Below are positions 15,667 through 59,330 of a stretch of 64,000 bases of DNA, in pieces. The DNA lies in the IMG/VR virus record IMGVR_UViG_3300042261_002390, positions 182,150 to 246,149 of that record, one strand, 5' to 3'. Each line of letters begins with the position of its first letter. Positions within the stretch are counted from its first letter, which is position 1. The position numbers and the translations under genes are program-made. The notes beneath the pieces were generated by a model. It had not been told where the DNA came from, ran no database searches, and saw only the letters and a list, made by a program, of their open reading frames with translations.

Positions 15667-16407
15667 ATGGAAATTTATAAAATTACGAACACGATAACAA
15701 ACGATTTTTATATTGGTTCTGCTGTGAACTTTAAAAATAGAAGGTGGGGTCACATTAGTTCTTTGAGAAAAAATAAGCATAAGAATCGATTTATTCAAAA
15801 TTCTTGGAATAAATATGGTGAAAATGCATTTATTTTTGAAATTATTGAAATTGTTGATGCTAAAGAAAATTTGATTGATAGAGAGCAATATTGGATTGAT
15901 ATCTTATCACCAACATTTAATTTGGCTAAGAAGGCAGGTAGTCCTTTAGGTGTTAAACATTCTGAAAAATCAAGAAAGAATATGTCATTAGCACATAAAG
16001 GATTGTCTAAAGAACAACGAGGACATAAAGAAAATTGTAATTGTTGTATTTGTAATCGTAAAAATGGTAATAATAGTCCACGATATATACAACGTGAAGA
16101 AAGAACATGCATTTGTGGATGTGGTACTAAATTTACTTGTAGAATTAATAGTAATAGAAAATTTATTTCAGGTCACAATAAATCACAATTAGGTAAGAAA
16201 AAAAGTTATGAAGCTATCGAAAAACAAAGAAACAAAATATTAACCCCAATATTACAATTTGATATTAATGGCAATTTAATTAAGGAATGGAAGGGCGTTA
16301 TTATTGCAGCAAATGAATTAAATATTGATAATACTGCAATTTCTGCCTGTTTAAGGGGAAAATCAAAAACATCTGGTGGATATATTTGGAAATATAAATT
16401 TAAATAA
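15667..16407 (+). CDS. free-standing GIY-YIG homing endonuclease with NUMOD3/NUMOD1-like DNA-binding modules
   Basis: EIYKITN...FYIGSA, R..H..L, FEIIE; KHSEKSRKNMS; C-terminal ILQFD...AISACLRGK...GGYIWKYK. Confidence 0.9.
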   Translation: MEIYKITNTITNDFYIGSAVNFKNRRWGHISSLRKNKHKNRFIQNSWNKYGENAFIFEIIEIVDAKENLIDREQYWIDILSPTFNLAKKAGSPLGVKHSEKSRKNMSLAHKGLSKEQRGHKENCNCCICNRKNGNNSPRYIQREERTCICGCGTKFTCRINSNRKFISGHNKSQLGKKKSYEAIEKQRNKILTPILQFDINGNLIKEWKGVIIAANELNIDNTAISACLRGKSKTSGGYIWKYKFK

Positions 16408-16414
16408 TTTAATT

Positions 16415-17566
16415 ATGAAGATAAGTATAATTCTTGGCGCATGTTTCGGAGACGAGGGTAAAGGTGCTTTCGTCAATTATCTGTGTAATAAAACAGACAA
16501 ACCATTGGTTGTTAGGTTTAACGGTGGTCAGCAATGTGGACATACTGTAGTATATAATGGAAACAGACACGTATTTTCAAATTTCGGTTCTGGAAGCCTT
16601 CGAGGTGTTCCGACATATTGGTCAGAGTATTGTACCTTAGACCCGATTGGTTTTAAAAATGAATTAGCATCGTTGAACCAAATTGGTATTATGCCAAAAA
16701 TAGTTTATAATGCTAATGCAATGGTGACTACACCTTTTGATAAATATCAGAACCATAAGCTCAATGCAATAAACAAACACGGTAGTGTTGGAGTTGGTTT
16801 TGGAACAACTATTCAACGAAACGAAGACCATTATCACTTATATGTGAGGGACTTACTGTATCCTAAAATCAGGGATGCTAAACTCGAAAATATTTGGAAG
16901 CAGTATTATAAGATATCTGAAATGTCAGGGGATTGGGAAGTTATAATGAATAAGTTTATCGAAGCATGTGATGTTTTTATTAACTATGCGCATTGCGGTA
17001 TAGTAAATTCAATTGATGAGATTTTATACTACGACCATTTAATTTTCGAAGGTGGTCAGGGCATATTACTTGACCAAAATTATGGATTCTTCCCAAATGT
17101 CACACGTAGCAATACAACATCAAAAAATGCAATTGAAATCATCAATAAATTGCCATTGTTTGAAGGCGATAAAGTAATTGATACATATTATATCACCAGA
17201 GCATATCAAACAAGGCATGGCAATGGTTATATGACGAATCAAGATTTAGATATCTCATATATTAAAGAAAATCCTAATGAAACCAATGTGATGGGTTTTC
17301 AGGGTGAATTCAGGAAATCTGTTCTTGATTTAGATTTGTTGAAATATGCTGTTCAATGTGACAAATATCACAATCCTAAGTCAAGGAAGAATCTCGTAAT
17401 TACGTGCCTAGACCAAATTCCAAGTAAGAATGCCGTACCACTTACTTTTGAAGGTAAATTAACACACATGAAACCTAAACAAATAAGTGAATTCTTGCTT
17501 GGAAACAGTATGGAAAGATGTTATCCAACATATTCAGATACCGGATATTCGGATGTACTTCCATAA
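16415..17566 (+). CDS. purA: adenylosuccinate synthetase-like protein (divergent PurA family)
   Basis: GACFGDEGKG, RFNGGQQCGHT, FEGGQGILLD, TRAYQTRHGNG; start moved to MKISIILG. Confidence 0.85.
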   Translation: MKISIILGACFGDEGKGAFVNYLCNKTDKPLVVRFNGGQQCGHTVVYNGNRHVFSNFGSGSLRGVPTYWSEYCTLDPIGFKNELASLNQIGIMPKIVYNANAMVTTPFDKYQNHKLNAINKHGSVGVGFGTTIQRNEDHYHLYVRDLLYPKIRDAKLENIWKQYYKISEMSGDWEVIMNKFIEACDVFINYAHCGIVNSIDEILYYDHLIFEGGQGILLDQNYGFFPNVTRSNTTSKNAIEIINKLPLFEGDKVIDTYYITRAYQTRHGNGYMTNQDLDISYIKENPNETNVMGFQGEFRKSVLDLDLLKYAVQCDKYHNPKSRKNLVITCLDQIPSKNAVPLTFEGKLTHMKPKQISEFLLGNSMERCYPTYSDTGYSDVLP

Positions 17567-43230: not shown

Positions 43231-44253
43231 ATGCAGCCGATATTATTAACACGTGATGATTTCCGGAATGGCGTTTTTGAGCGTGATTCTCATAAATGCG
43301 TTATCTGCAAGAAACCTGCAGTTGACGCACATCACATTATTGAGCGCAGACTATTTTCAAATGGTGGATACTACATCGAGAATGGCGCATCGCTTTGCGC
43401 TGAACACCATGTTGAAGCAGAGCAAACCACATTATCTTGTGATGTGATTCGTGAAAAATGTGGCATTGAAACTATCGTATTGCCTGACCATTTTTATGAT
43501 GATAATGAATACGATAAGTGGGGAAATATCATATTGCCGAATGGTAACAGGGTTAAAGGCGAATTATTCTATGATGAAAGCGTTCAGAAGATACTGAAAC
43601 AAGGTGGCGTGTTGGATTTATTTGTTAAGTATGTAAAGTACCAAAGAACTTTCCATTTACCGTGGAGTAATCTGTTGAAAGACGATAGAATTCTTGAAAA
43701 CGATAATCATTTTCACGGTAAACGTGTCGTCGTGACACTTAAAATGGATGGTGAAAATACTACTATGTATAACGACCATATTCATGCACGTTCATTAGAA
43801 TCAGCTAGTCATGAAACACGTAATTGGGCTAAGGGTTTATGGTCTAGGATTTCATATTTACTTGATGATAACATGCGCATTTGTGGTGAAAACCTATATG
43901 CAGTTCATTCTGTTAAGTATGAGGAATTACCAACGTATTTTATGATGTTTTCAATCTGGATTGATAACAAATGCTTGTCTTGGGATGAAACCCAAGAATA
44001 TGCCAAAATTCTTGGATTAGAGACAGTCCCGGTCTTCTATGATGGAATTTACGATAAAGACAAAATAATCGCCGAATTCGAGAAATACAGGCTTAAAAAC
44101 GAAGGATATGTTATTCGTTTAGCTGATGAATTTTATTATCAGGATTTCCGCAAATCTATTGCAAAATACGTGCGTCCAGAGTTTAGACAAATCGTCAATA
44201 ACTCACATGGACACTGGATTTCGAAAAAAGTTGAACCAAATAAATTAAAATAA
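43231..44253 (+). CDS. HNH domain fused to an ATP-dependent RNA ligase domain
   Basis: CVIC...DAHHII...NGASLCAEHH; TLKMDGENTT, ICGEN, FSIW, EGYVIR, AKYVR. Confidence 0.85.
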   Translation: MQPILLTRDDFRNGVFERDSHKCVICKKPAVDAHHIIERRLFSNGGYYIENGASLCAEHHVEAEQTTLSCDVIREKCGIETIVLPDHFYDDNEYDKWGNIILPNGNRVKGELFYDESVQKILKQGGVLDLFVKYVKYQRTFHLPWSNLLKDDRILENDNHFHGKRVVVTLKMDGENTTMYNDHIHARSLESASHETRNWAKGLWSRISYLLDDNMRICGENLYAVHSVKYEELPTYFMMFSIWIDNKCLSWDETQEYAKILGLETVPVFYDGIYDKDKIIAEFEKYRLKNEGYVIRLADEFYYQDFRKSIAKYVRPEFRQIVNNSHGHWISKKVEPNKLK

Positions 44254-44801
44254 TGAAGGAGCAGAAATATAAATTAGTTGAAAAAGCATATTGTATTGAT
44301 TTAATTCGTATTAAACATGGATATGAATATTCTCTAGTAGTTTGTCACGCAAAAAACCTGAACGCAGCTAAATCGATTATCTATAAATTGATTAAAAACG
44401 AGGGAATGGAAAACTGCTATGATGAACCAATATCACTCGCAAATATTCCGGTTATTAGATATGAAAATTCAGACCACTATTTTTTCGAAAATAAGATTAT
44501 GACTCTTAGGGAAATTAATGGTACTGTTAAAGAAAGACTAAGGATAGCTAAACTCGAACGATTGTTGAATGATGAATCAATTAAATTCTGCCACATTTGT
44601 AAACATGGTTCGTATTATCGCCCAAATTCTGCCGGATATACCGATTATCTTTCTCGTGCAGGTGTATATGAAAAAAAGGAAGCGATTGAGCATGCCAGAC
44701 GTTGCGATGAACTATCGCTAATCCCTATCAATATTGAAACCCACAACAAATTAATATACGATGAAATTAAAGATTTGCAGTTATTATTAATTTCTGAATA
44801 A
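44253..44801 (+). CDS. hypothetical protein
   Basis: 182 aa; YYRPNSAGYT motif. Confidence 0.7.
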   Translation: MKEQKYKLVEKAYCIDLIRIKHGYEYSLVVCHAKNLNAAKSIIYKLIKNEGMENCYDEPISLANIPVIRYENSDHYFFENKIMTLREINGTVKERLRIAKLERLLNDESIKFCHICKHGSYYRPNSAGYTDYLSRAGVYEKKEAIEHARRCDELSLIPINIETHNKLIYDEIKDLQLLLISE

Positions 44802-44805
44802 TAAT

Positions 44806-44832
44806 TGTAACATTTAATACATTTCATACGTA
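44806..44832 (+). promoter_or_regulatory. ECF-type promoter TGTAAC-N17-CGTA
   Basis: Recurrent intergenic motif. Confidence 0.65.
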
Positions 44833-44857
44833 GAAGAGAAAAACAAATTAAAATTAT

Positions 44858-45292
44858 ATGTCATTCAATCCAGAAGAAATTAAACAAGGTAATGAAATCA
44901 TCGCCAAAGCATTGGGGTGGTTTCAGGAAGAAGGTCAGGATGGTACGTGGTTTAAAATATTCGGAAATCGCATAGTAGTCGCATACTCAATTCATAACAA
45001 TTATCCGCATAAAGACCTTCCATTTCATCGTGATTGGAATGCATTGTATGAAATAATCGAAGTCATTGAGTCATTAGACCAAGGTGAGGCATATGATTGC
45101 GGATTATCACATATGTACACTATTGAAACTACTCGTAATGGCAGCACAGCATACAGAAACTATAGAACTCGTGAACATAACGGCATTATCTGCCGGAGAA
45201 ACACCAGAGATAATCGTATTGAAAACACATGGTACGTTGTAGTTGAGTTTATTAAATGGTATCAGAAAGAAAATAATATAAGCAATGGATAG
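44858..45292 (+). CDS. hypothetical protein
   Basis: 144 aa; FHRDWNALYEIIEVIE motif. Confidence 0.7.
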   Translation: MSFNPEEIKQGNEIIAKALGWFQEEGQDGTWFKIFGNRIVVAYSIHNNYPHKDLPFHRDWNALYEIIEVIESLDQGEAYDCGLSHMYTIETTRNGSTAYRNYRTREHNGIICRRNTRDNRIENTWYVVVEFIKWYQKENNISNG

Positions 45293-45521
45293 TCTATTAA
45301 GCGGTTATTTATCATTTGGCTTGACGATGTTGAGCGATATGAAAAGACAAAACAAAGCGTGGAAAGATAGGATTCGTAAACAGTGGAAAGAATCTCAAAA
45401 TCTTCCTAGAAAGAAGAAGAAAAGTGTCCGTAAAAATCTGCTGCTTGAATGGCAAATTGCTAATTATGACCCAATGGGGTTGTATGACAATGATTTTGAT
45501 GAAATTCTTACCTTTTTGTAA
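45285..45521 (+). CDS. hypothetical protein
   Basis: 78-aa ORF. Confidence 0.6.
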   Translation: MDSLLSGYLSFGLTMLSDMKRQNKAWKDRIRKQWKESQNLPRKKKKSVRKNLLLEWQIANYDPMGLYDNDFDEILTFL

Positions 45522-45542
45522 CAAAATTTAATTCAAAACGTA
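45517..45542 (+). promoter_or_regulatory. ECF-type promoter TGTAAC-N16-CGTA
   Basis: Recurrent motif overlapping the upstream stop. Confidence 0.65.
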
Positions 45543-45551
45543 TAGGTTATT

Positions 45552-45845
45552 ATGGATAAATGGATTACATATGACGGAAGAGTTGTTGATATGAATGAAA
45601 TGTCGCATCAGCACATGAGTAACATTTATTGGTTCATAAATGTATTATTTCCCGAATCATATAATGTTTATATTCGGCATAATATCAGAACTTGGTTGAA
45701 TCTAAGATTTAAGGGTGAAGTATTACCTTACTCTCCCAAACCTGAATTTGTTGCAGAATTAAATTACTTGCGAATGAAAGGTTATCTTAAAGAAAATAAT
45801 AAAATTGTAATTGACGGTCAAGAAATTGGCAAATATAAACTTTAA
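45552..45845 (+). CDS. hypothetical protein
   Basis: 97-aa ORF. Confidence 0.65.
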   Translation: MDKWITYDGRVVDMNEMSHQHMSNIYWFINVLFPESYNVYIRHNIRTWLNLRFKGEVLPYSPKPEFVAELNYLRMKGYLKENNKIVIDGQEIGKYKL

Positions 45846-45859
45846 AAAATTTAAGTGTT

Positions 45860-46225
45860 ATGAGAAACGGTATTAAAACATTTTTTGTATTAATCATTGC
45901 GTTGGTTATTGTTGGTTCAGTATCTAAACTTTATTTTACAACAATGACTGAAGTGGTTAATAATTGCAAAGTAGAACGTTTAGTTCAGCAGCAAATTATC
46001 TCCAATGGCGATAATGGCAGTATTTCAACAGGTTACAGATATTTGGTAATAACCAATAAAGAAACCTTCATTTGTGAGAGTTCGCTATTGAATGGCAAAT
46101 TCAACAATTCAGACATTTTTTTCAGATTGAAAGAAGGCGAGACTTATAACTTTAAGGTTGCGGGTTACGGCAAAACGTTTTTCACAGACTATCGTAATCT
46201 ACTTGACATAGAACCGAAACAGTAA
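45860..46225 (+). CDS. membrane-anchored OB-fold-like protein
   Basis: N-terminal TM; YRYLVITNKETF...LKEGETYNFKVAG. Confidence 0.7.
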   Translation: MRNGIKTFFVLIIALVIVGSVSKLYFTTMTEVVNNCKVERLVQQQIISNGDNGSISTGYRYLVITNKETFICESSLLNGKFNNSDIFFRLKEGETYNFKVAGYGKTFFTDYRNLLDIEPKQ

Positions 46226-46605
46226 TGAACTACTACAAAGAAATATTATCGATTATTGAAGTATTCAGTAAAAATACTACCTTAGTTAAATCATCAGAAT
46301 ACTCAATGCTCACGCATCTGATTAAGTTATTGGGTGAGGACAGATTCAATATGATATTCAAAAGAGATTTTATTGAATCTGAAGATGATTTCGGAACTAA
46401 ATTCTGTAAATTTCATAAATCAATGCGTCAGGTTGATTTCTATAATATTTCTGATTTTGAGGGTAATGGACACTTAGATATGTTATTTTGGAATTTTATA
46501 TACATATCCAACATTCCGGAAATTATATTCAAAGCATTGTTGGAGTATATTAGCGATTGGGAATATGAACACCCGGATAATGTTGTAAGGGATTTTGCCA
46601 AATAA
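46225..46605 (+). CDS. hypothetical protein
   Basis: 126 aa, stop/start overlap. Confidence 0.65.
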   Translation: MNYYKEILSIIEVFSKNTTLVKSSEYSMLTHLIKLLGEDRFNMIFKRDFIESEDDFGTKFCKFHKSMRQVDFYNISDFEGNGHLDMLFWNFIYISNIPEIIFKALLEYISDWEYEHPDNVVRDFAK

Positions 46606-46607
46606 TT

Positions 46608-46633
46608 TGTAACTTTTTTTAATTAATTTCGTA
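46608..46633 (+). promoter_or_regulatory. ECF-type promoter TGTAAC-N16-CGTA
   Basis: Recurrent intergenic motif. Confidence 0.65.
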
Positions 46634-46654
46634 TAACAAGAAAAAAAGATTAGT

Positions 46655-47095
46655 ATGGCGTTAAGTTATAAATTTGCTAAAATTGCTGCTAGAATTCGTA
46701 GACGTTTCAGAACGAAAACGAAACGTAGCAGAGAAAAGGTAGCATTCAAATCATTATCTGCTGAACAGCTTAAAGTTTTTAATATTGTTAAAGATTTAGC
46801 TATGCAGAATAATGATGCAATTAAGTTCGACCCTAAATCAAGCGAGTCGTTAATTGTTATTCCCGATAAATTATTGGTGACTATGAAGAACGAACAGGTG
46901 CGTATTGATAATTCTAGAGGGTTTATGTCAATTCAAATGCCTAGTGAAGCATTTGATATGTTGATTGAAATTGTTGAAGCAGAAGCACATAAAGACCGGA
47001 GAAAAATAAAACAAGATGTGAAGCTTAGACTCCATTCTTTCTTGGACGATATTATTGAAAACGAAATAAAAAACACCGAAAATGAGCATAGGTAA
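46655..47095 (+). CDS. basic hypothetical protein
   Basis: 146-aa ORF. Confidence 0.7.
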   Translation: MALSYKFAKIAARIRRRFRTKTKRSREKVAFKSLSAEQLKVFNIVKDLAMQNNDAIKFDPKSSESLIVIPDKLLVTMKNEQVRIDNSRGFMSIQMPSEAFDMLIEIVEAEAHKDRRKIKQDVKLRLHSFLDDIIENEIKNTENEHR

Positions 47096-47498
47096 TACTG
47101 AAATGTACCGCAAGGTAAGTGAATTTTATCGTGAGTTAAAAGAAGATGGTGCGTATTATTCTTCTTTCGAAGCACTTGAATATATGTATCAAGCTGCTCT
47201 CGAAAAAATGGAAAATCAATCAAAAGTTATTGGCGAAATTGATAACGATTACGTTGCTGATATACTTACTAAAAGTTTTAGCAATTATGGTATTAAGTTC
47301 GTTAAACCCGAAGACAATAGGGTATTACCAACCATTAGAATTATTGTTACCGGAAACAAGTATCTTAAAGAAGATTCGTCAATAAGCCTTAGCGACGATT
47401 TTTATCGTGAACTGAGAACCATATTGGTAAGATTGAAAATAAATGATATTCAGTGGAACAACAACAGAACATCGTTTTGGTGGAATCCAAAAAAATAA
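47082..47498 (+). CDS. hypothetical protein
   Basis: 138-aa ORF. Confidence 0.65.
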   Translation: MSIGNTEMYRKVSEFYRELKEDGAYYSSFEALEYMYQAALEKMENQSKVIGEIDNDYVADILTKSFSNYGIKFVKPEDNRVLPTIRIIVTGNKYLKEDSSISLSDDFYRELRTILVRLKINDIQWNNNRTSFWWNPKK

Positions 47499-47500
47499 TT

Positions 47501-47764
47501 ATGAAACACGTAGCAGTTATATGTAGTTCGGTTGAAGACTTTAATAATTGGAAGAAAGAACAAAAACATACTTCTTTAATTAGTTCAGCCTTAAAATATG
47601 TGTTTGATGGGACGATGTATATCCGTATATCGAAAAAATATCAAATGTGTGGATATAGTTTTGATGAAATTGTTGAAACCCGGGATGCTGCAAATAATCC
47701 TGAATACCATCAGATTATGGATAACATTAAGACATGCATTAAATCAAAGGCTGATGTAAAATAG
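47501..47764 (+). CDS. hypothetical protein
   Basis: From MKHVAVIC. Confidence 0.6.
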   Translation: MKHVAVICSSVEDFNNWKKEQKHTSLISSALKYVFDGTMYIRISKKYQMCGYSFDEIVETRDAANNPEYHQIMDNIKTCIKSKADVK

Positions 47765-47775
47765 TTGCAAATAAT

Positions 47776-47802
47776 TGTAACCTTTTCATTAATACAAACG
47801 TA
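47776..47802 (+). promoter_or_regulatory. ECF-type promoter TGTAAC-N17-CGTA, upstream of the CRISPR locus
   Basis: Recurrent motif, 10 nt upstream of scaffold 1. Confidence 0.7.
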
Positions 47803-47812
47803 TAAGAAAAAA

Positions 47813-47982
47813 GTTCATTGAAAATATTAAGTATTTGCATATTTTATTATGCAAAGTGCGTGTTGTGACGCACATAGTGATTCTCGAAGAGACGAGAATG
47901 AGTTTAAACTCAGGGAAATTTCCACTCACTAACAACCAACAAATTTGTATGTTGTTATTTGTCAACACGTTATAGATAATAT
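47813..47982 (+). ncRNA. tracrRNA-like scaffold 1 (also serves as array leader)
   Basis: Near-duplicate of 49604-49776; hairpin loop GTTGTG (47862-47867) complements repeat end CACAAC; TGTCAAC (47960-47966) complements repeat GTTGACA. Confidence 0.8.
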
Positions 47983-48243
47983 GGTGTAACTAATCACAAT
48001 TTGAGAGGTTGACACAACGCTAGTCCGTAAACCCACCCCCCCAAAGGCGGTGTAACTAATCACAATTTGAGAGGTTGACACAACGCAAGCTATCAACACT
48101 AAAAAAATAATATGGTGTAACTAATCACAATTTGAGAGGTTGACACAACCAGACAGAATTACTTAAAGGTGTAACTAATCACAATTTGAGAGGTTGACAC
48201 AACTTCGGATGACCTTTAGGTGGTGTAACTAATCACAATTTGA
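47983..48243 (+). CRISPR. CRISPR array 1: 4 full 36-nt repeats plus one truncated; spacers 30, 29, 18, 18 nt
   Basis: Repeat GGTGTAACTAATCACAATTTGAGAGGTTGACACAAC at 47983, 48049, 48114, 48168; first 22 nt only at 48222. Confidence 0.93.
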
Positions 48244-48261
48244 TTAAAAACAAAAAAAAAA

Positions 48262-49602
48262 ATGGAAAATTATTGTATTAAAACAAGAAAGATTACGATA
48301 ATTCCTTCAGGGGATAATCGGAATGATGTTTATTCGTATATTCGAAAAATGGCATCAGATTTAGCAAGAATTGGTAATGGCGTGATTAGGCTTCACTTTA
48401 ACAATCAATACGATATTGATGAAATATCGAAGTCACGTAATATTACTAAGTCGGATGCAAAGAAATTTGTTGAAGAAAAGCTTGGTACGTCAATTCGTAA
48501 TTCTGGTTATCAATCATTGACTGAGTTGATTGACATATCTTCAAATATTCGCACATCGTTTAATTCATTGATTTTTAAAACAACACAAAATAATTTCTTT
48601 GATGTTTTAACGGGGAAAATGAGTATTCCTTCATTCAGGAAGACCAACATCAATATTCCGTTTCAATTTAAGGGAGATGCTCCGTTTAGTCTGGATGAAA
48701 AAGAATACTATTATTTCAATTTACCCTCAACCAAACACACTAAAGAAACAATCGGTGAACTGAAATTATCGTTGTTCTTTGGAAAAGATAGAAGCAATAA
48801 TCGTATTATTGTCGAACGCATTCTTAGTGGCGAATATGAAATATGCGATAGCTCAATTCAAGTAAAGGATAAAGATTTGTTTTTGTTGCTAACATATAAA
48901 CAGCCAATAAGCGAAAAGCTATTAAAACCTGAAAAAGTAATGGGTATTGATATCGGCATTAATCGTCCGGTAAGTTTTTACATCAGTGATGAAAAACATC
49001 AGCCAAGACAGTTTAATCTTAACGAGCATATACAGCATGAGAGGCTTAAATTGTTGAAACAAAGAAAATCGCTTCAACAATCATTAAAATTTTCTGTTGG
49101 TGGTCATGGTAGAAATCGAAAATTAGTGGCACTGAATGTATTAAAAGAAAAAGAATTACGTTGGGCAAAAAATAAGAATCATCAAATCACTAAAGCAATT
49201 ATTGATATTGCGCTACAGTATGGTGTTGGGGTGATTAAAATGGAAGATTTGACTGGTATTACTCAAGATACTAAAAATTATTTCTTGAAGTCTTGGGCAT
49301 ATTATCAACTGCAAAGCTTCTTGGAATATAAAGCCAAATCCTATGGTATTAAAATCTTATGGGTTGACCCAAAAAATACGTCTAGAACATGTCCTGTTTG
49401 TGGTAATGTCGATAAAGAAAACAGACATAGCACAGTCTTTAAATGTGTAAATGAATCATGTCCAGACCACGATGTTGAAAAAGATGCCGATATTGTCGCA
49501 GCTTTGAATATATCAAAATCAATTGGTTCTGATGTGAAACCTAAATCGAAAAAGGGAATTATCAGTGCTAAGACAAAACAAAAAGATATTGTTGAAGCAT
49601 AA
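48262..49602 (+). CDS. cas12f: compact type V effector, Cas12f-like (TnpB-derived RuvC nuclease)
   Basis: RuvC D230 (GIDIG), E328 (MEDL), D410 (DAD..AALNI); Zn finger CPVC/CVNESC; GGHGRNRKL and ERILSGEY segments typical of Cas12f1; flanked by two arrays. Confidence 0.88.
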   Translation: MENYCIKTRKITIIPSGDNRNDVYSYIRKMASDLARIGNGVIRLHFNNQYDIDEISKSRNITKSDAKKFVEEKLGTSIRNSGYQSLTELIDISSNIRTSFNSLIFKTTQNNFFDVLTGKMSIPSFRKTNINIPFQFKGDAPFSLDEKEYYYFNLPSTKHTKETIGELKLSLFFGKDRSNNRIIVERILSGEYEICDSSIQVKDKDLFLLLTYKQPISEKLLKPEKVMGIDIGINRPVSFYISDEKHQPRQFNLNEHIQHERLKLLKQRKSLQQSLKFSVGGHGRNRKLVALNVLKEKELRWAKNKNHQITKAIIDIALQYGVGVIKMEDLTGITQDTKNYFLKSWAYYQLQSFLEYKAKSYGIKILWVDPKNTSRTCPVCGNVDKENRHSTVFKCVNESCPDHDVEKDADIVAALNISKSIGSDVKPKSKKGIISAKTKQKDIVEA

Positions 49603-49603
49603 C

Positions 49604-49776
49604 GTTCATTGAAAATATTAAGTATTTGCATATTAATTATGCAAAGTGCGTGTTGTGACGCACATAGTGACTTGTGAATAAACACAAGGGTTAATAAATA
49701 ACCGGAAGCTATGCTTCACTCACTAACAACCAACAAAATTGTATGTTGTTTTATGTCAACACGTTATTGGTAATAG
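49604..49776 (+). ncRNA. tracrRNA-like scaffold 2 (also serves as array leader)
   Basis: Starts 2 nt after the cas12f stop; same hairpins as scaffold 1 with compensatory changes; GTTGTG loop 49652-49657, TGTCAAC 49754-49760. Confidence 0.8.
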
Positions 49777-50241
49777 GTTGTGACAAGACACAATTTTTGG
49801 GGTTGACACAACACTACCGAGTTTGAGCAACGATGTGAAGAAGTTGTGACAAGACACAATTTTTGGGGTTGACACAACAACTGTTCAGTAGCTATTGTAG
49901 ATGAACTAGTTGTGACAAGACACAATTTTTGGGGTTGACACAACTAGTGCTTTATAGCTGCCGAAGTGATTTCAGTTGTGACAAGACACAATTTTTGGGG
50001 TTGACACAACACAAGGATGACTGGTTTTTTCTTTGCTGGTTGTGACAAGACACAATTTTTGGGGTTGACACAACAGCATGATGACAGGCAAAACAGTCGA
50101 TTTTGTTGTGACAAGACACAATTTTTGGGGTTGACACAACAGATTAACAACGAAGAATGGATTACGAGCAGTTGTGACAAGACACAATTTTTGGGGTTGA
50201 CACAACTATAAGGGCAATATCGTTCTGATAAGACACAATTT
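49777..50241 (+). CRISPR. CRISPR array 2: 7 full 36-nt repeats plus a degenerate terminal repeat; spacers 30, 30, 30, 28, 30, 30, 15 nt
   Basis: Repeat GTTGTGACAAGACACAATTTTTGGGGTTGACACAAC at 49777, 49843, 49909, 49975, 50039, 50105, 50171; partial copy at 50222. Confidence 0.96.
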
Positions 50242-50299
50242 CGAATATGTTTTGTATTTATAAACAACACAGTTTGAATAGTTGATACAACATACAATC

Positions 50300-50461
50300 A
50301 TGAAAAAGAACATGCTCGATATTATTAATGAAGAGATTGAGGCAGATAGTAATCAAGATGTCTTGAATGAAATCCTTGATAATCTTGAAGGTCTTGATGA
50401 TTCAAGTCCAAATCTTCCTTTATATGGTGACCATTTAAAAAGTATTAGCGAAGCTGATTAA
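50300..50461 (+). CDS. small very acidic protein (53 aa)
   Basis: Manual translation MKKNMLDIINEEIEADSNQDVLNEILDNLEGLDDSSPNLPLYGDHLKSISEAD*. Confidence 0.55.
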   Translation: MKKNMLDIINEEIEADSNQDVLNEILDNLEGLDDSSPNLPLYGDHLKSISEAD

Positions 50462-50464
50462 TTT

Positions 50465-50491
50465 TGTAACCTTTCTTTATTGTCTAACGTA
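50465..50491 (+). promoter_or_regulatory. ECF-type promoter TGTAAC-N17-CGTA
   Basis: Recurrent intergenic motif. Confidence 0.7.
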
Positions 50492-50510
50492 TAATTTAGA
50501 AAAAATTATC

Positions 50511-50813
50511 ATGAAAAAGACAGGCATAACATTAAATTTAATTATTCGTAAAGAATATCCGGTTATTGTCAAGGAGATAAGAGTTGATGAGTTGGATAGA
50601 GCTAAATGCAGCAATAAATTTTTGAAACACATCGACAATATGCTTCAAAGCAATCCCGAAGTAAAGGTTTATGTTAAAGTATCGAACAACGGTGATGTTG
50701 ATTATCGTAAAAAAAGTGGCGATAAATTAGAGTATCGTATTTTCGATATTAGTAAGCATGAAGCTATCAGTCATTCGTTTTTCCTGCCGGAAGGTAAAAA
50801 AATTATATTCTAA
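50511..50813 (+). CDS. hypothetical protein
   Basis: 100-aa ORF. Confidence 0.65.
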   Translation: MKKTGITLNLIIRKEYPVIVKEIRVDELDRAKCSNKFLKHIDNMLQSNPEVKVYVKVSNNGDVDYRKKSGDKLEYRIFDISKHEAISHSFFLPEGKKIIF

Positions 50814-51055
50814 TGAAAAAAATCACACACACTACACAGTATTGGTTATTCAAAGAAATACCAAGTGAGTATGAAAAAAAATATTACTACGTAAGATGTA
50901 TGGTACGTGGTTTAACTGCTGTTTGGTTCATGGGATATGAAAACCACATGAATCTAGTATCAAGAATTGGGGGTGATTTAAGCGAAGAACTTGCCAATAA
51001 ACTTGAAGCAGAATTTCAGGAGTACATCAAAAATAATCCCGAAGAACAAGTTTAA
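50813..51055 (+). CDS. hypothetical protein
   Basis: 80 aa, stop/start overlap. Confidence 0.6.
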   Translation: MKKITHTTQYWLFKEIPSEYEKKYYYVRCMVRGLTAVWFMGYENHMNLVSRIGGDLSEELANKLEAEFQEYIKNNPEEQV

Positions 51056-51064
51056 TTAAAAGTT

Positions 51065-51091
51065 TGTAACCTTTTATCAACACTAAACGTA
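51065..51091 (+). promoter_or_regulatory. ECF-type promoter TGTAAC-N17-CGTA
   Basis: Recurrent intergenic motif. Confidence 0.65.
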
Positions 51092-51133
51092 CAAGTAGTT
51101 GATAAAAATATTGTAGAACTAAAAATTATTGCC

Positions 51134-51694
51134 ATGTTTTATAAATTTGACAAGAATGAATTGAAATACATTAAGGTAAAGTGGACGACAATTGGATTGA
51201 ATACCTTAGCTGTATTATCAATCATTGTTTTTATTTTTGGTTGGACGTTTAAGCGTGAAAACAAACAGTCATACAATGAAGAAGAAGTATTGATATTCAC
51301 TGCAAAGCAAAATGCCTTTACCAACGAAAAATTTATTGACGAAATCAAGCACATGAATTTTAAATTTCCACACATCGTTTATGCACAAGCATTACTTGAG
51401 ACCGGACGATTTAAAAAGCCAATTTTCGTCGAAAATAACAATCTCTTCGGAATGAAAGAAGCTATAATTAGAGTTAATACTTCTTTAGGTACTGAGAACG
51501 GTCATGCTACATATAAAAATTGGAGAGAGTCATTAATCGATTATGCACTATACTATGCAACGTATTTGAGCCGGATTGATAATGAAGATGATTATATTTC
51601 GTATCTCTCTCAAAAATATGCTGAAGACCCTAATTATGCAAATAAATTACGTGAGTTAATTAAAACCGAAAATCTTAAACAAAAATTAAATTAG
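51134..51694 (+). CDS. membrane-anchored glucosaminidase (GH73-like peptidoglycan hydrolase)
   Basis: AQALLETG, NNLFGMK, YAEDPNY motifs; N-terminal TM helix. Confidence 0.85.
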   Translation: MFYKFDKNELKYIKVKWTTIGLNTLAVLSIIVFIFGWTFKRENKQSYNEEEVLIFTAKQNAFTNEKFIDEIKHMNFKFPHIVYAQALLETGRFKKPIFVENNNLFGMKEAIIRVNTSLGTENGHATYKNWRESLIDYALYYATYLSRIDNEDDYISYLSQKYAEDPNYANKLRELIKTENLKQKLN

Positions 51695-51696
51695 TC

Positions 51697-52005
51697 ATGG
51701 GAGAAAATAACAATAAGCCAATTATTCATGTTAAGACATTTACAAATGAAGAACTTGACTCAATGTATGGTAAGAGAAAAATTGAAGTTGGTAAATGTTT
51801 TAAATCAGAATCCGGTCATTTATATAAGCAATTATCAAACAGTGTGTTGCATTTGAATATTCAGTCTGAAACCGAATTTTTAGCCAATACGCTACATGTT
51901 GGGTTTTTAAATGATAGGAGTTATTATCACTTTATCGAAATCGATGGGAATGAGTTTAATAATAAATTGGTTGATATTATTTTAAAATTATCATCGATGG
52001 CGTAA
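51697..52005 (+). CDS. hypothetical protein
   Basis: 102-aa ORF. Confidence 0.6.
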   Translation: MGENNNKPIIHVKTFTNEELDSMYGKRKIEVGKCFKSESGHLYKQLSNSVLHLNIQSETEFLANTLHVGFLNDRSYYHFIEIDGNEFNNKLVDIILKLSSMA

Positions 52006-52020
52006 ATAACATCAATATTT

Positions 52021-52047
52021 TGTAACATTTCAATAGGTTTATTCGTA
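52021..52047 (+). promoter_or_regulatory. ECF-type promoter TGTAAC-N17-CGTA
   Basis: Recurrent intergenic motif. Confidence 0.65.
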
Positions 52048-52086
52048 TTATATAAAAACGAATAAACCTTTTTAACATTTTTGACT

Positions 52087-52647
52087 ATGAAAAACTTTAT
52101 AAAAAAAATCAGTGTTTTGATTGCTGTTATGATGATTCCTATTGCTTATTTAACAGGTGTGCTTATTCTATATTGGAATTATGGGTATACTAATAGACCA
52201 TTCGTGGAATATTTATTGAATACCAATATCGTTATAATATTAAGTTATTTTTGTGTTGGTATTTTAGCTTGGGCATTTATCTTATATTTTGCTTACATGA
52301 TTAATTTCTTCATCAACGAGTTATTAGGCAAACCGACAAAACCTGCGCCTAAGTTTGATGTCACCAAGCATGGAGATTTTCGTAGGTATTACGATAGGAC
52401 TAGAAAAAGAAACTATTGGGTTTTAGGCTATTTTGGTGGTGGTAGTGTCAATGTTGTTGACGCATATGAAGTAGCTAAACAATTTAGCATCGCTGTTAAT
52501 GTACCGATTAATACAGTACATATTGATGAGATATTTAAATCTAGAAGATTTAAAGGTTTCAAATACGTATATTCAAATGTTGAAAATCAAATACCTGAAA
52601 AAAATTCTGATGTCATGAATGATGTTTGGAATTGGTTAGGTGATTAA
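52087..52647 (+). CDS. membrane protein with a soluble C-terminal domain
   Basis: Two TM segments followed by GYFGGGSV...SRRFKGFK. Confidence 0.7.
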   Translation: MKNFIKKISVLIAVMMIPIAYLTGVLILYWNYGYTNRPFVEYLLNTNIVIILSYFCVGILAWAFILYFAYMINFFINELLGKPTKPAPKFDVTKHGDFRRYYDRTRKRNYWVLGYFGGGSVNVVDAYEVAKQFSIAVNVPINTVHIDEIFKSRRFKGFKYVYSNVENQIPEKNSDVMNDVWNWLGD

Positions 52648-52680
52648 AAATAATGTTAAGATTTTAAAACTATATTCACT

Positions 52681-52980
52681 ATGGAATTAAATTTAATTAT
52701 TTATCTGTTGGGAGTAATGTTTATGTTCTCATTCCTATTGATTGGTTGGGGATTAAATGTTGCAAACATACAACAATTTCTATCGGTTGAAAAGTTTAGT
52801 ATTATAGGCGTTGTTGGTTCATTATTTTTATGTGCATTAGTATTTCCATTCACAATTGCCATATCAGTTGTTTTTTTACTGTTCATGCTTTGTTGTGGGA
52901 AATCTATAAAAAAACAAGAGAATATAAAAAATACTCATCACAAGAAAAATATTAAGCATGAAACAAGAAAAAAAACTTAG
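52681..52980 (+). CDS. small membrane protein
   Basis: Two TM segments and a basic tail. Confidence 0.6.
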   Translation: MELNLIIYLLGVMFMFSFLLIGWGLNVANIQQFLSVEKFSIIGVVGSLFLCALVFPFTIAISVVFLLFMLCCGKSIKKQENIKNTHHKKNIKHETRKKT

Positions 52981-53407
52981 AAGACTTAAGCATCTTGTTC
53001 ACAAATATGATATGATGCTTGCCATATATTTTCGTTCGTATGAGAAAGGTAAGCTAAACTATGACCTTATTGCATATTTTGACGAAAGAATAGAATCGTA
53101 TTCTGATTTTGGTGACTCTCGTTCAGTAGAATGGTTTAAGGCATTTAGTGAGATTAAAGCATTGGTTCTGGACTTATCACTAACCAAAGAAGAGTATTTT
53201 AAAATATGTACTGAGGAAAGAAAAAAAATAAACGATGCCCAAGACTTACTGCGTGTAAATAATCTCAAGGAAACACGTGATAATAAGGGTGTTTATGTAG
53301 GAAGTGGTGGGTCTAATAAGAACAGAATTCGATATCCGAAGAAAGCAAGGTCTAAACGAGTTTGGAGAATATTTTATGAAATGTTCCCTAATTTAGTGAA
53401 AAAATAA
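52958..53407 (+). CDS. hypothetical protein
   Basis: 149-aa ORF. Confidence 0.65.
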   Translation: MKQEKKLRRLKHLVHKYDMMLAIYFRSYEKGKLNYDLIAYFDERIESYSDFGDSRSVEWFKAFSEIKALVLDLSLTKEEYFKICTEERKKINDAQDLLRVNNLKETRDNKGVYVGSGGSNKNRIRYPKKARSKRVWRIFYEMFPNLVKK

Positions 53408-53422
53408 TCAAATCGTAAATAA

Positions 53423-53791
53423 ATGGAAAGAATATATAAAGCAGTTGATGGAACTGAATTTAAGTCGAAACTTGATTGTAAAAATCATGAGGCTAAACTC
53501 AACGAATTAAAAAACGTAGTGTTAAATGCTTTAAATTCGGGAGTATTTGGCGTTATGAAAAGTCCGGAACGTAAAGATGTGCCCTTGCTGGATTCACGCA
53601 ATAAGCCTAGTGATTATAGATATAATTGTGGCGATGGATTCTCCGGTTTTAAAATCTATGACAGATATGGTTATAAAATCCATATTGTTTTTAAACTAAG
53701 AGGTAGAAGATTAAAAATTCTTAGGTATGCTTATGATGAATGTGAAACATGGGTTAAATATTGTGGTAGTGTATATCTTAAAAAGCTATAA
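53423..53791 (+). CDS. hypothetical protein
   Basis: YKAVDGTEFKSKLDCKNHE N-terminal motif. Confidence 0.65.
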   Translation: MERIYKAVDGTEFKSKLDCKNHEAKLNELKNVVLNALNSGVFGVMKSPERKDVPLLDSRNKPSDYRYNCGDGFSGFKIYDRYGYKIHIVFKLRGRRLKILRYAYDECETWVKYCGSVYLKKL

Positions 53792-53793
53792 TT

Positions 53794-54186
53794 ATGTGGG
53801 ATGATATTATAATTGGAAGCGGGACTAAGTATTGTAGTTCATTTATTTTTTATCGGAGCGTAAAAACTGACATCAGTATTTCACAAAATAAATCATCATA
53901 TTGGGTTAGTCATTGTATCTTCGATAAGGGCATTACCATCTATAAAGACTGTAGGGAAGGGGAAAAGCTCACTAAATTGCTTGAACTTCCTGAAGACAAA
54001 GACCAAACTGTTTTTACGCCAAAAAAATCGAAAGACAGCCAGATTGTTGAGTTTTTAAATAAGCTCGTCATAAAACATTTGTCTTACGAAGCAATGATTA
54101 CTTCAATCGAAGAAATTCGAAAAAAAGCTTTTGATGAAGGTCAAAATGCTAAAGCTGAGGAAATTCGTAATGCATTATTTCTTTAA
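53794..54186 (+). CDS. hypothetical protein
   Basis: 130-aa ORF. Confidence 0.65.
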   Translation: MWDDIIIGSGTKYCSSFIFYRSVKTDISISQNKSSYWVSHCIFDKGITIYKDCREGEKLTKLLELPEDKDQTVFTPKKSKDSQIVEFLNKLVIKHLSYEAMITSIEEIRKKAFDEGQNAKAEEIRNALFL

Positions 54187-59318: not shown

Positions 59319-59330
59319 TTGAAAAACGTA
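59305..59330 (+). promoter_or_regulatory. ECF-type promoter variant TGAAAC-N16-CGTA
   Basis: Single-base variant of the recurrent motif, at the end of the upstream gene. Confidence 0.55.

What the first reader, a model, noticed from the sequence alone, without database searches (positions are those of the whole stretch)
47813..49776. The two scaffolds covary in three hairpins of a multiway junction and carry the two-part repeat:anti-repeat pairing of Cas12f
Seen: the copies are nearly identical at both ends but differ in the middle, where pairing is preserved. Inside a TAGTGA/TCACTA closing stem, copy 1 has TTCTCG/CGAGAA, TGAGT/ACTCA and GGAA/TTCC; copy 2 has CTTGTG/CACAAG, GGTTA/TAACC and GAAGC/GCTTC. 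Both keep TTTGCATA/TATGCAAA and GTGCGT-GTTGTG-ACGCAC. The GTTGTG loop is the exact complement of the repeat end CACAAC, and the 3' TGTCAAC complements repeat GTTGACA. These are the repeat positions conserved between the two arrays. Established: Cas12f and TnpB guide RNAs use a pseudoknot next to the guide plus a second repeat:anti-repeat duplex. Inference: both scaffolds are under selection as functional RNAs, and this pair supplies a natural alignment for designing a minimal sgRNA.
Basis: partly seen in the sequence, partly recalled or inferred. Interest (0 to 1): 0.8.

Follow-up and report, generated by a model that had tools for sequence, protein, structure and literature searches.

The report
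Twin tracrRNAs of a phage Cas12f
Two copies of the guide-scaffold RNA (tracrRNA) of the miniature CRISPR nuclease Cas12f flank its gene in a giant-phage genome; about 70 relatives keep the same fold, so they are real functional RNAs of a known kind, but one of the two proposed pairings with the CRISPR repeat was put in the wrong place.

Summary
Confirmed. 47813-47967 and 49604-49761 are two same-strand copies of a ~155-nt structured RNA gene. Each lies about 15 nt upstream of its own CRISPR array. They flank a 446-aa Cas12f (closest solved structure: Al3Cas12f, 9NZO). The ends are 93-97% identical and the middle 38%, yet all three junction hairpins persist.

A covariance model built from one copy finds 73 distinct homologues beside Cas12f relatives, all on the gene's strand. 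92-97% of cells pair, against 31-46% in slid controls.

The pseudoknot (GTTGTG loop with repeat end CACAAC) is supported. Loop and repeat end covary across loci (GTTGTA:TACAAC, GTTGGA:TCCAAC). The published Al3Cas12f sgRNA has the same arrangement.

The second pairing is misplaced. GTTGACA overlaps CACAAC by 2 nt. Homologues and Al3Cas12f put the anti-repeat right after the closing stem (CAACC:GGTTG, covarying as ATACC:GGTAT, ATACT:AGTAT, ATCCC:GGGAT). TGTCAAC sits at the far end of the anti-repeat, where relatives pair with the repeat's 5' end.

One phage promoter motif precedes copy 1 and none precedes copy 2, which suggests a single operon. No listed RNA run held the locus.

This is a known kind (type V-F tracrRNA) in a new phage clade. 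The more interesting lead is in relatives: fused single-guide scaffolds and 12-nt mini-repeats.

The parts
47775..47806 (+). Phage promoter-like motif (TTGTAAC, about 17 nt, ACGTATAAG). It ends 6 nt before scaffold copy 1.
   Evidence: ACGTATAA occurs 16 times in the window, all on the + strand, against 3.0 expected. All copies but one share an upstream GTAAC box (the one at 59326 reads GAAAC), and most lie 20-50 nt before an ATG. No copy lies between 47806 and 50487.
47813..47967 (+). tracrRNA gene, copy 1 (5' leader, P1, P2, four-way junction, anti-repeat region).
   Evidence: Covariance model hit of 151.5 bits, E 2.6e-36. Fold z-score -3.65.
47834..47855 (+). P1 hairpin of copy 1 (TTTGCATA/TATGCAAA).
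   Evidence: In the family, helix 1 is 92.5% paired and all 8 pairs show changes on both sides.
47856..47873 (+). P2 hairpin of copy 1. Its loop GTTGTG (47862-47867) is the pseudoknot partner of the repeat's last 6 nt, CACAAC.
   Evidence: Helix 98% paired. Loop and repeat end pair in 96% of cells across 31 scaffold/repeat combinations, against 21-58% in shifted registers.
47875..47931 (+). Four-way junction of copy 1: closing stem 47875-80/47926-31, P3a 47881-98, P3b 47899-912, P3c 47914-23.
47933..47945 (+). Proximal anti-repeat of copy 1. CAACC (47933-37) pairs with repeat GGTTG. CAAATT (47940-45) pairs with repeat AATTTG.
   Evidence: Family covariation, 93% paired against 21-54% shifted. 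RNAduplex optimum. Same position as the anti-repeat in the Al3Cas12f sgRNA.
47960..47966 (+). It lies at the distal end of the anti-repeat region.
   Evidence: Its 7-nt complement GTTGACA is in the repeat, but that target overlaps both conserved targets. In relatives the equivalent tail pairs with the repeat's 5' end.
47983..48243 (+). CRISPR array 1: four 36-nt repeats (starts 47983, 48049, 48114, 48168) and a truncated 22-nt repeat at 48222. Spacers are 30, 29, 18 and 18 nt.
48262..49602 (+). cas12f, 446 aa. It has the RuvC residues D230/E328/D410 and a CxxC...CxxxxC zinc ribbon.
   Evidence: Pfam PF07282, 1e-18. PDB 9NZO (Al3Cas12f) 3.5e-55 and AsCas12f 1e-40. Invariant columns.
49604..49761 (+). 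tracrRNA gene, copy 2. It starts 2 nt after the cas12f stop codon.
   Evidence: This copy was the seed of model R1. Fold z-score -4.11.
49646..49663 (+). P2 hairpin of copy 2, with pseudoknot loop GTTGTG (49652-49657).
49665..49725 (+). Four-way junction of copy 2: closing stem 49665-70/49720-25, P3a 49671-88, P3b 49689-703, P3c 49705-17.
49727..49742 (+). Proximal anti-repeat of copy 2. CAACC (49727-31) pairs with GGTTG. AAAATTGT (49735-42) pairs with ACAATTTT.
49754..49760 (+). TGTCAAC of copy 2.
49777..50241 (+). CRISPR array 2: seven 36-nt repeats (starts 49777 to 50171), spacers of 28-30 nt, and a degenerate terminal repeat from about 50222.

Best explanation
The two scaffolds are paralogous tracrRNA genes of a phage-encoded type V-F (Cas12f) CRISPR system. 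The system is related to the Al3Cas12f/MG119 clade.

Each RNA folds into P1, P2 and a four-way junction, followed by an anti-repeat.

A crRNA made from either array docks through the last 12 nt of its repeat:
- GGTTG pairs with CAACC, which lies 2 nt after the junction's closing stem.
- One A stays unpaired.
- CACAAC pairs with the GTTGTG loop of P2 and forms the pseudoknot next to the guide.

The rest of the 36-nt repeat can continue an interrupted duplex along the tracrRNA 3' region. TGTCAAC lies at the far end of that region.

The three junction hairpins are constrained in shape, not in sequence. That is why two very different versions can serve one protein.

The whole locus (tracr1, array 1, cas12f, tracr2, array 2) is probably one transcription unit driven by the phage promoter at 47775-47806.

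Basis of each step:
- Shown: the anatomy, the conservation, the covariation and the homology.
- Inferred: transcription, processing and nuclease activity.
For: - Cas12f identity.
- 89 model hits (73 distinct), all on the cas12f strand, upstream and/or downstream of the gene in most relatives' loci.
- Structure counts on the model-fitted alignment: 91.8% paired against 66% shuffled and 36-46% slid, with 40 of 44 pairs changed on both sides.
- Structure counts on an independent MAFFT/RNAalifold alignment: 97.4% paired against 31-45% slid, with 14 of 19 pairs compensatory.
- Pseudoknot: 96% paired in register against 21-58% shifted. The sixth pair switches A-U to G-C in the window, L005 and L050. 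The fifth pair switches U-A to G-C in L081 and L070.
- Anti-repeat: 93% paired against 21-54% shifted. Pairings seen are ATACC:GGTAT, ATACT:AGTAT, GTACC:GGTAC, ATCCC:GGGAT and CAACC:GGTTG.
- The published Al3Cas12f sgRNA has the same order of parts and the same 2-nt and 1-nt linkers.
- L081 encodes an Al3Cas12f orthologue (E 1e-270), and its tracrRNA is hit by the window's model.
- RNAduplex puts the optimal tail:repeat duplex at CAACC:GGUUG and onward.
- All 63 scaffolds with enough downstream sequence have a cognate 12-nt unit within 200 nt.
- Promoter motif. No + strand terminator-like site in 47400-50500.
Against: - No listed RNA run holds the locus, so the RNA ends, the processing and even transcription are unproven.
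- Single-strand folding prefers the cis hairpin AACAAC/GTTGTT and a self-folded repeat over the trans duplex.
- CAACC:GGTTG is only 5 bp, and the continuation is interrupted.
- TGTCAAC:GTTGACA is the longest uninterrupted complement of the tail in this window.
- The model's alignment to the Al3-type tracrRNA is good only for the 5' half. The junction is misaligned there.
- No protospacer was found.
Confidence: 0.8

Rival explanations
1. The tracrRNA holds the repeat through the GTTGTG loop with CACAAC, plus the 3' TGTCAAC with GTTGACA.
For: Both complements are exact in both copies and both arrays. TGTCAAC:GTTGACA is the longest uninterrupted tail:repeat helix in the window, at 7 bp.
Against: - The two repeat targets share 2 nt (C-6 and A-5), so both cannot fully form.
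- GTTGACA also covers 4 of the 5 nt of GGTTG. The partner of GGTTG, CAACC, sits where the anti-repeat sits in Al3Cas12f and covaries in 31 combinations.
- In relatives the equivalent tail element pairs with the repeat's 5' end. In L007, TGTTCACAAC pairs with GTTGTGAATA. In L026 the tail follows that locus's unusual repeat 5' part.
- About two thirds of relatives have no such tail at all.
- The global RNAduplex optimum does not use this pairing.
Confidence: 0.12
2. The scaffolds act in cis as omega-RNA-like single guides. The hairpin AACAAC/GTTGTT and the following CAACAC would be a built-in repeat end, and the sequence after it would be the guide. The arrays would be secondary.
For: Roughly two thirds of homologous scaffolds carry a cognate 12-nt repeat end within 45 nt of the closing stem, followed by unique sequence. 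The window's tail aligns with that fused repeat end in L005.
Against: - In the window the built-in element is degenerate. Only 4 of 6 pseudoknot pairs form, and it carries an 8-nt insertion.
- The sequence after it is nearly the same in both copies (GTTATAGATAATAT and GTTATTGGTAATAG). It therefore looks like a leader, not a spacer.
- Intact repeats with perfect targets follow about 15 nt later.
Confidence: 0.08
3. The conserved elements are DNA signals (array leader, promoter or operator palindromes), not RNA structure.
For: The scaffolds occupy the leader position of both arrays. P1 is a perfect palindrome, identical in both copies. A sigma-70-like match overlaps 47818-47845.
Against: - Compensatory changes keep the pairing in every helix, P1 included, and all hits share one strand.
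- P1, P2 and the junction are part of an experimentally used sgRNA in the related Al3Cas12f.
- Promoter-like matches in the region are no more frequent than in shuffles: 12 against 15.0.
Confidence: 0.03

Closest known systems
Al3Cas12f / Cas12f-MG119 guide RNA (tracrRNA plus crRNA; PDB 9NZO; PMC13186708)
   Same: The order of parts is the same:
- P1 hairpin.
- P2 hairpin whose 6-nt loop complements the last 6 nt of the repeat.
- A closing stem that encloses three hairpins.
- A 2-nt linker, then the anti-repeat.
- On the repeat side: the duplex, one unpaired A, the 6-nt pseudoknot partner, then the guide.

The locus layout is also the same, gene then tracrRNA then array, on one strand (L081). 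The 5' leader GTTCTTTGAA is shared. The window's model hits the L081 tracrRNA.
   Different: - The protein is only 34% identical and lacks about 40 residues.
- The junction sequences are not alignable.
- The loop:end pair is GTTGTG:CACAAC rather than GTTGGA:TCCAAC.
- The window has a second tracrRNA-array module upstream of the gene.
- The window lies in a 246-kb viral contig.
Un1Cas12f1 and AsCas12f sgRNAs (PDB 7C7L, 7L48, 8J12)
   Same: An asymmetric-dimer Cas12f with a long tracrRNA. It has a pseudoknot (repeat:anti-repeat 1) next to the guide and a second repeat:anti-repeat stem. This is described in PMC10097598. The protein similarity is significant.
   Different: The tracrRNAs show no detectable sequence similarity. 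The number and arrangement of stems differ. Correspondence with individual stems was not tested here.
ISDra2 TnpB omega-RNA
   Same: The guide-pseudoknot-stem core is shared, and the omega-RNA acts as a natural single guide (PMC10097598). Many relatives of the window's scaffold are fused to a repeat end and a guide in the same way.
   Different: - The window has separate arrays with 36-nt repeats.
- Pfam found no transposase in ten sampled ORFs between 44858 and 52644.
- The scaffold starts after the stop codon rather than overlapping the gene.
Omega-RNA arrays of RpoE-associated inactivated TnpB derived from Cas12f (PMC10691335)
   Same: That paper describes the following sequence: the array is minimised to a half repeat beside the tracrRNA, the two fuse, and the fused unit is duplicated. 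Relatives L031, L032 and L038 carry 4 scaffold modules, each with a fused repeat end and 12-nt mini-repeats.
   Different: Here the nuclease keeps its catalytic residues. The loci are in phage contigs and have no sigma-factor association. The window itself is of the split, classical type.

Membership tests
Type V-F Cas12f effector | A single RuvC domain with the D/E/D catalytic residues, plus a C-terminal zinc ribbon (TNB), in a 400-700 aa protein. | tested here: met
   446 aa. PF07282 at 1e-18. D230, E328, D410 and C377/C380/C395/C400 are invariant in 32 relatives.
Type V-F Cas12f effector | Significant sequence similarity to structurally characterised Cas12f proteins. | tested here: met
   9NZO (Al3Cas12f) 3.5e-55, AsCas12f 8J12 1e-40, Un1Cas12f1 7L48 2.8e-22.
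Type V-F Cas12f effector | Adjacent CRISPR array. Adaptation genes are usually absent. | tested here: met
   Two arrays flank the gene. Pfam found no Cas1, Cas2 or Cas4 in ten sampled ORFs between 44858 and 52644.
Type V-F Cas12f effector | RNA-guided, PAM-dependent dsDNA cleavage by an asymmetric homodimer. | not testable with these tools
   Needs biochemistry or a PAM-depletion assay.
Cas12f tracrRNA (Al3Cas12f/MG119 type) | Encoded beside cas12f on the same strand, between the gene and the array. | tested here: met
   All 89 hits are on the + strand of loci that were oriented by the gene.
Cas12f tracrRNA (Al3Cas12f/MG119 type) | A conserved secondary structure supported by compensatory changes. 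| tested here: met
Cas12f tracrRNA (Al3Cas12f/MG119 type) | A pseudoknot between an internal loop and the repeat nucleotides next to the guide. | tested here: met
   Complementarity and covariation across 31 scaffold/repeat combinations. Physical formation was not tested.
Cas12f tracrRNA (Al3Cas12f/MG119 type) | An anti-repeat that forms a second duplex with the repeat, directly 3' of the scaffold core. | tested here: met
   CAACC:GGTTG, with covariation in the family. Interrupted extension. Same position as in the Al3Cas12f sgRNA.
Cas12f tracrRNA (Al3Cas12f/MG119 type) | Detectable homology to an experimentally validated tracrRNA. | tested here: inconclusive
   The model hits the tracrRNA of the Al3Cas12f orthologue L081 at E 1.6e-4. 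Only the leader, P1, P2 and the start of P3 align convincingly. The rest matches in architecture only.
Cas12f tracrRNA (Al3Cas12f/MG119 type) | Expressed as a discrete small RNA bound by the effector. | tested here: inconclusive
   No listed RNA run holds the stretch. The one metatranscriptome that was laid gave nothing.
TnpB omega-RNA (IS200/IS605) | A single guide fused to the scaffold, no repeat array, overlap with the gene's 3' end and transposon end, and an associated transposase. | tested here: not met
   Arrays are present. The scaffold starts after the stop codon. Pfam found no transposase domain in the sampled neighbouring ORFs.
Any Rfam family | A match at or near the gathering score. 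| tested here: not met
   The only hit is a chance-level ciliate telomerase match on the - strand: 28.6 bits against a gathering score of 52, E 0.12.

The most novel reading that the evidence does not exclude
This phage-borne Cas12f clade may be caught moving in both directions between a split guide (tracrRNA plus array) and a fused one.

About two thirds of its scaffolds are natural single guides: scaffold, short loop, a 12-nt repeat end, then the guide. These are often followed by further guides separated only by 12-nt mini-repeats, and whole modules are multiplied up to four times per locus.

The window's copies would be the split form that still carries a decayed cis repeat (the AACAAC/GTTGTT hairpin and the TGTCAACAC tail).

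If the fused modules are active with a catalytically intact nuclease, they would define in nature the minimal repeat (12 nt) and a ready-made sgRNA design. They would also give a living series for the omega-RNA/tracrRNA splitting and re-fusion scenario.
Probability: 0.45. Interest if true: 0.7.

Novelty: new member of a known kind. Interest (0 to 1): 0.5.

Why it matters
It pins down, by comparative evidence alone, the guide-RNA architecture of an uncharacterised phage clade of very small (about 446 aa) Cas12f nucleases.

It shows which 12 repeat nucleotides matter, which scaffold parts are constrained in sequence (P2 loop, closing stem, proximal anti-repeat), and which only in shape (the junction hairpins, P1).

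That is directly usable for sgRNA design.

The family alignment of 73 scaffolds, and the fused and mini-repeat relatives, bear on how tracrRNA/crRNA pairs and omega-RNAs interconvert.

Tried and rejected
- Rfam scan of 47000-51000 found nothing relevant.
- Megablast of 44000-54000 against deposited phages gave no match. tblastn of the protein against the same collection reached at most 32% identity, so the clade is known only from metagenomes.
- Protospacer searches all found only the array itself or nothing: three spacers as 22-mers in IMG/VR, all spacers against the window and fetched loci with up to 2 mismatches (the one hit is at chance level), and both arrays by blastn against deposited phages.
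- RNA evidence: two run searches and one read-laying. Only DNA runs hold the locus.
- Folding scaffold plus first repeat plus spacer as one strand does not decide between cis and trans pairing, because the repeat's self-complementary ends dominate.
- The idea that each scaffold is matched to its own array is rejected. Duplex energies are -9.6 and -10.8 for copy 1 and -11.9 and -12.9 for copy 2 with repeats 1 and 2. Copy 2 binds both repeats better, and the 12-nt core is identical.
- A leader:tail closing helix (UUGAAAAUA with UAUUUGUCAA) forms in copy 1. In copy 2 it is reduced to 4 bp, so it is not taken as conserved.
- P1 as a DNA operator is rejected on covariation.
- Cas12p ('Cas12 hacker', a phage-encoded enzyme of 500-700 aa) was considered and rejected. 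The E-value to 9JFS is 0.08, and size and PAM biology differ.
Full report
**What is there.** The + strand carries, in order:
- a structured element (47813-47967);
- a CRISPR array of four 36-nt repeats plus a truncated one (47983-48243);
- a 446-aa ORF (48262-49602);
- a second copy of the element, starting 2 nt after the stop codon (49604-49761);
- a second array of seven 36-nt repeats (49777-50241).

The ORF is a Cas12f:
- Pfam Cas12f1-like TNB domain, 1e-18.
- Best solved relatives are Al3Cas12f 9NZO (3.5e-55), AsCas12f (1e-40) and Un1Cas12f1 (2.8e-22).
- The RuvC D/E/D residues and the four zinc-ribbon cysteines are invariant in an alignment of 32 relatives.

The window comes from a 246-kb IMG/VR viral contig. 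It encodes phage-type DNA ligase, Dda-like helicase and RNA ligase. Pfam found no Cas1, Cas2 or Cas4 in ten sampled ORFs between 44858 and 52644.

The minimum-free-energy folds of both copies reproduce P1, P2 and a closing stem that encloses three hairpins. Their z-scores are -3.65 and -4.11.

The copies are 66/68 identical in the 5' part, 18/47 in the three hairpins and 42/45 in the 3' part. Read directly from the sequence, 4 of 6 pairs of the first hairpin and 4 of 5 of the second differ on both sides and remain pairs.

Small corrections:
- Copy 1's third hairpin can only be GGA/UCC with a 4-nt loop.
- There is a further hairpin, AACAAC/GTTGTT.

**Family evidence.** The protein has more than 200 relatives, most at 45-60% identity and about 450 aa long. 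I fetched their loci from metagenomes, viral contigs and genomes.

A covariance model built from copy 2 alone found 89 matches, 73 of them distinct, in those loci. All are on the strand of the cas12f gene. They lie upstream and/or downstream of the gene, with up to four per locus.

On the model-fitted alignment:
- 91.8% of cells form pairs, against 66% after shuffling and 36-46% when partners are slid.
- 40 of 44 pairs show changes on both sides.

Because that alignment leans towards the model, I repeated the test on an independent MAFFT alignment of 26 diverse members with an RNAalifold structure:
- P2, the closing stem, P3a and the base of P3c are recovered.
- 14 of 19 pairs are compensatory.
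- 97.4% of cells pair, against 31-45% slid.

P3b is missing in one subclade. P1 varies freely but stays paired. The scaffolds are therefore RNAs under selection for this fold.

**The pseudoknot.** Repeats in the related loci were found by repetition alone. They end in GGTAT-A-TACAAC in most loci.

| Loci | P2 loop | Repeat end |
|---|---|---|
| Most relatives | GTTGTA | TACAAC |
| Window, L050 | GTTGTG | CACAAC |
| L005 | ATTGTG (first position unpaired) | CACAAC |
| L081, L070 | GTTGGA | TCCAAC |

Over 31 distinct scaffold/repeat combinations, 96% of cells pair in register, against 21-58% in shifted registers. There are two independent double changes.

**The anti-repeat.** The five nucleotides that begin 2 nt after the closing stem pair with repeat positions -12 to -8. 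They covary with them:
- ATACC:GGTAT
- ATACT:AGTAT
- GTACC:GGTAC
- ATCCC:GGGAT
- TTACC:GGTAG
- in the window, CAACC:GGTTG

These are 93% paired, against 21-54% shifted. In long-repeat relatives the duplex continues, as ATACCTTTTA:TGAAAGGTAT. In the window it continues after a small internal loop, as CAAATT:AATTTG in copy 1 and AAAATTGT:ACAATTTT in copy 2.

**Match to a validated guide RNA.** The supplementary table of the Al3Cas12f paper (PMC13186708) gives its 134-nt sgRNA. Read by eye, it has these parts in order:
- a P1 hairpin;
- a P2 hairpin with loop GUUGGA;
- a closing stem around three hairpins;
- two A's;
- the anti-repeat AUUCACUUGA;
- the engineered tetraloop;
- the repeat part UCAAGUGAAU;
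- one A;
- UCCAAC;
- the guide.

This is the same order and the same 2-nt and 1-nt linkers as inferred here.

Locus L081 encodes an Al3Cas12f orthologue (E 1e-270 to 9NZO). It has the same gene-tracrRNA-array layout, and the window's model hits it at E 1.6e-4. Only the leader, P1, P2 and the start of P3 align convincingly.

The general rule, a pseudoknot (repeat:anti-repeat 1) plus a stem (repeat:anti-repeat 2), is stated for Cas12f and TnpB in PMC10097598.

- GTTGACA occupies repeat positions -11 to -5 and CACAAC occupies -6 to -1. The two proposed duplexes compete for two nucleotides.
- GTTGACA also covers four of the five nucleotides of GGTTG.
[quoted passage not shown] In L007, TGTTCACAAC pairs with GTTGTGAATA. 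In L026 the tail has changed along with that locus's unusual repeat 5' part.
- RNAduplex on the window's own sequences finds a different best tail:repeat interaction. It is an interrupted helix that starts at CAACC:GGUUG. With both tails on repeat 2 (-19.2 and -19.0 kcal/mol) and with tail 2 on repeat 1 (-14.5 kcal/mol), the helix runs on until the CAAC or ACAC of the TGTCAACAC tail meets the repeat's 5' end. With tail 1 on repeat 1 (-12.5 kcal/mol) it stops short of the TGTCAAC tail.

TGTCAAC:GTTGACA remains the longest uninterrupted complement. I keep it as a minor rival at about 0.12.

**Nature of the difference between the copies.** In other loci with two or more scaffolds, the paralogues share P2, the closing stem and the anti-repeat almost exactly. 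P1 and the tails are only about 30% identical, and P3a is 60-100% identical.

The window shows the reverse. P1 and the tail are 90-95% identical, while P3a, P3b and P3c are 33-44% identical. Copy 1's middle is 70% like that of the closest relative, L005. Copy 2's middle resembles more distant members at about 60%.

This is a mosaic. Either a recent duplication or gene conversion spared the middle, or a cassette was imported. It is not stepwise compensatory evolution. It still shows that one protein accepts two very different junction sequences with the same shape.

The layout scaffold-array-gene-scaffold-array recurs in at least eight other loci.

**Transcription (inferred).** The octamer ACGTATAA occurs 16 times in the window, all on the + strand, against 3 expected. 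All copies but one are preceded by a GTAAC box, and most lie 20-50 nt before an ATG. This looks like a phage promoter class.

One copy ends 6 nt before scaffold 1, so the conserved unit begins at about the predicted start site. None lies between 47806 and 50487, and no + strand terminator-like site was found.

The simplest reading is one transcript covering tracr1, array 1, cas12f, tracr2 and array 2, which must then be processed.

No listed RNA run holds the locus. The same phage is present in DNA runs from two freshwater studies, and a 90-95% relative is present in wastewater.

**Relatives.** All 63 scaffolds with enough downstream sequence have a cognate 12-nt unit within 200 nt. In about two thirds it lies within 45 nt of the closing stem, which is a fused, single-guide-like form. 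A few of those calls are repeat 5' ends picked up by the relaxed criteria.

In L031, L032 and L038, four such modules follow each other, with extra guides separated only by 12-nt mini-repeats such as AGTATATACAAC.

PMC10691335 describes the same sequence of events (half-repeat, fusion with the tracrRNA, duplication into omega-RNA arrays) for an inactivated, sigma-factor-associated offshoot of Cas12f. Here the nuclease motifs are intact. The window's scaffolds are of the split type. Their AACAAC/GTTGTT hairpin and TGTCAACAC tail align with the fused repeat end of L005, so they may be its decayed remnant.

**Verdict.** The system is a new member of a known kind: type V-F with an Al3Cas12f-type guide RNA, in a phage clade absent from deposited phage genomes. 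Function (targets, PAM, processing) remains untested.

Noticed in passing
window, 16 sites, e.g. 10037, 14408, 37264, 41253, 47798, 50487, 62767 (+ strand): A bipartite promoter-like motif, TTTGTAAC then about 17 nt then ACGTATAA(G/T). It occurs 16 times, all on the + strand, against 3 expected. Most copies lie 20-50 nt upstream of an ATG. A similar TTTACGTATAA motif precedes cas12f, the scaffold and a lone repeat unit in L005.
   Followed up: partly
window 16376-17566 (+): An adenylosuccinate-synthetase homologue (Pfam PF00709, 2e-43). It matches the PHROG family annotated as the PurZ-type enzyme of 2-aminoadenine (Z-base) phages. If the genome carries Z instead of A, that could bear on self-protection from nucleases.
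   Followed up: no
window 48085-48113 and 48150-48221: The second 'spacer' of array 1 (29 nt) resembles the scaffold tail and leader just upstream of the array: TCAACAC, a gap, then ATAATAT directly before the repeat. It looks like a segmental duplication rather than an acquired spacer. Spacers 3 and 4 are only 18 nt.
   Followed up: partly
L031:1984-3269, L032:2554-3841, L038:4354-5295: Four scaffold modules in a row downstream of cas12f. Each is fused to a repeat end and a guide, and is followed by further guides separated by 12-nt mini-repeats. Small ORFs and a GCGGGGGAC motif lie between the modules.
   Followed up: partly
L005:4775-4860: A stand-alone unit: the promoter-like TTTACGTATAAT, then only the 3' part of a repeat (ACAATTTGGTGTTGACACAAC), then unique sequence. 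No scaffold precedes it.
   Followed up: no
window 50262-50299: A decayed copy of the repeat's 3' part (ACAGTTTGAATAGTTGATACAAC) lies about 20 nt after array 2's degenerate terminal repeat. It ends 8 nt before the ATG at 50300.
   Followed up: no
window 47863-47898 (loose ends in runs X1 and X3): In both freshwater DNA runs, another contig matches only P2 and the start of the junction, then continues with different sequence that ends in CACTCACTAAGATA. This is a further scaffold variant from another genome in the same communities.
   Followed up: no
window 47813-47833 / 49604-49624; L081:1950-1972: The 5' leader GTTC(A/T)TTGAA..ATATTA before P1 is conserved from the window to the distant Al3Cas12f-type locus. 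Its role (RNA 5' end, processing site or promoter part) is unknown.
   Followed up: partly
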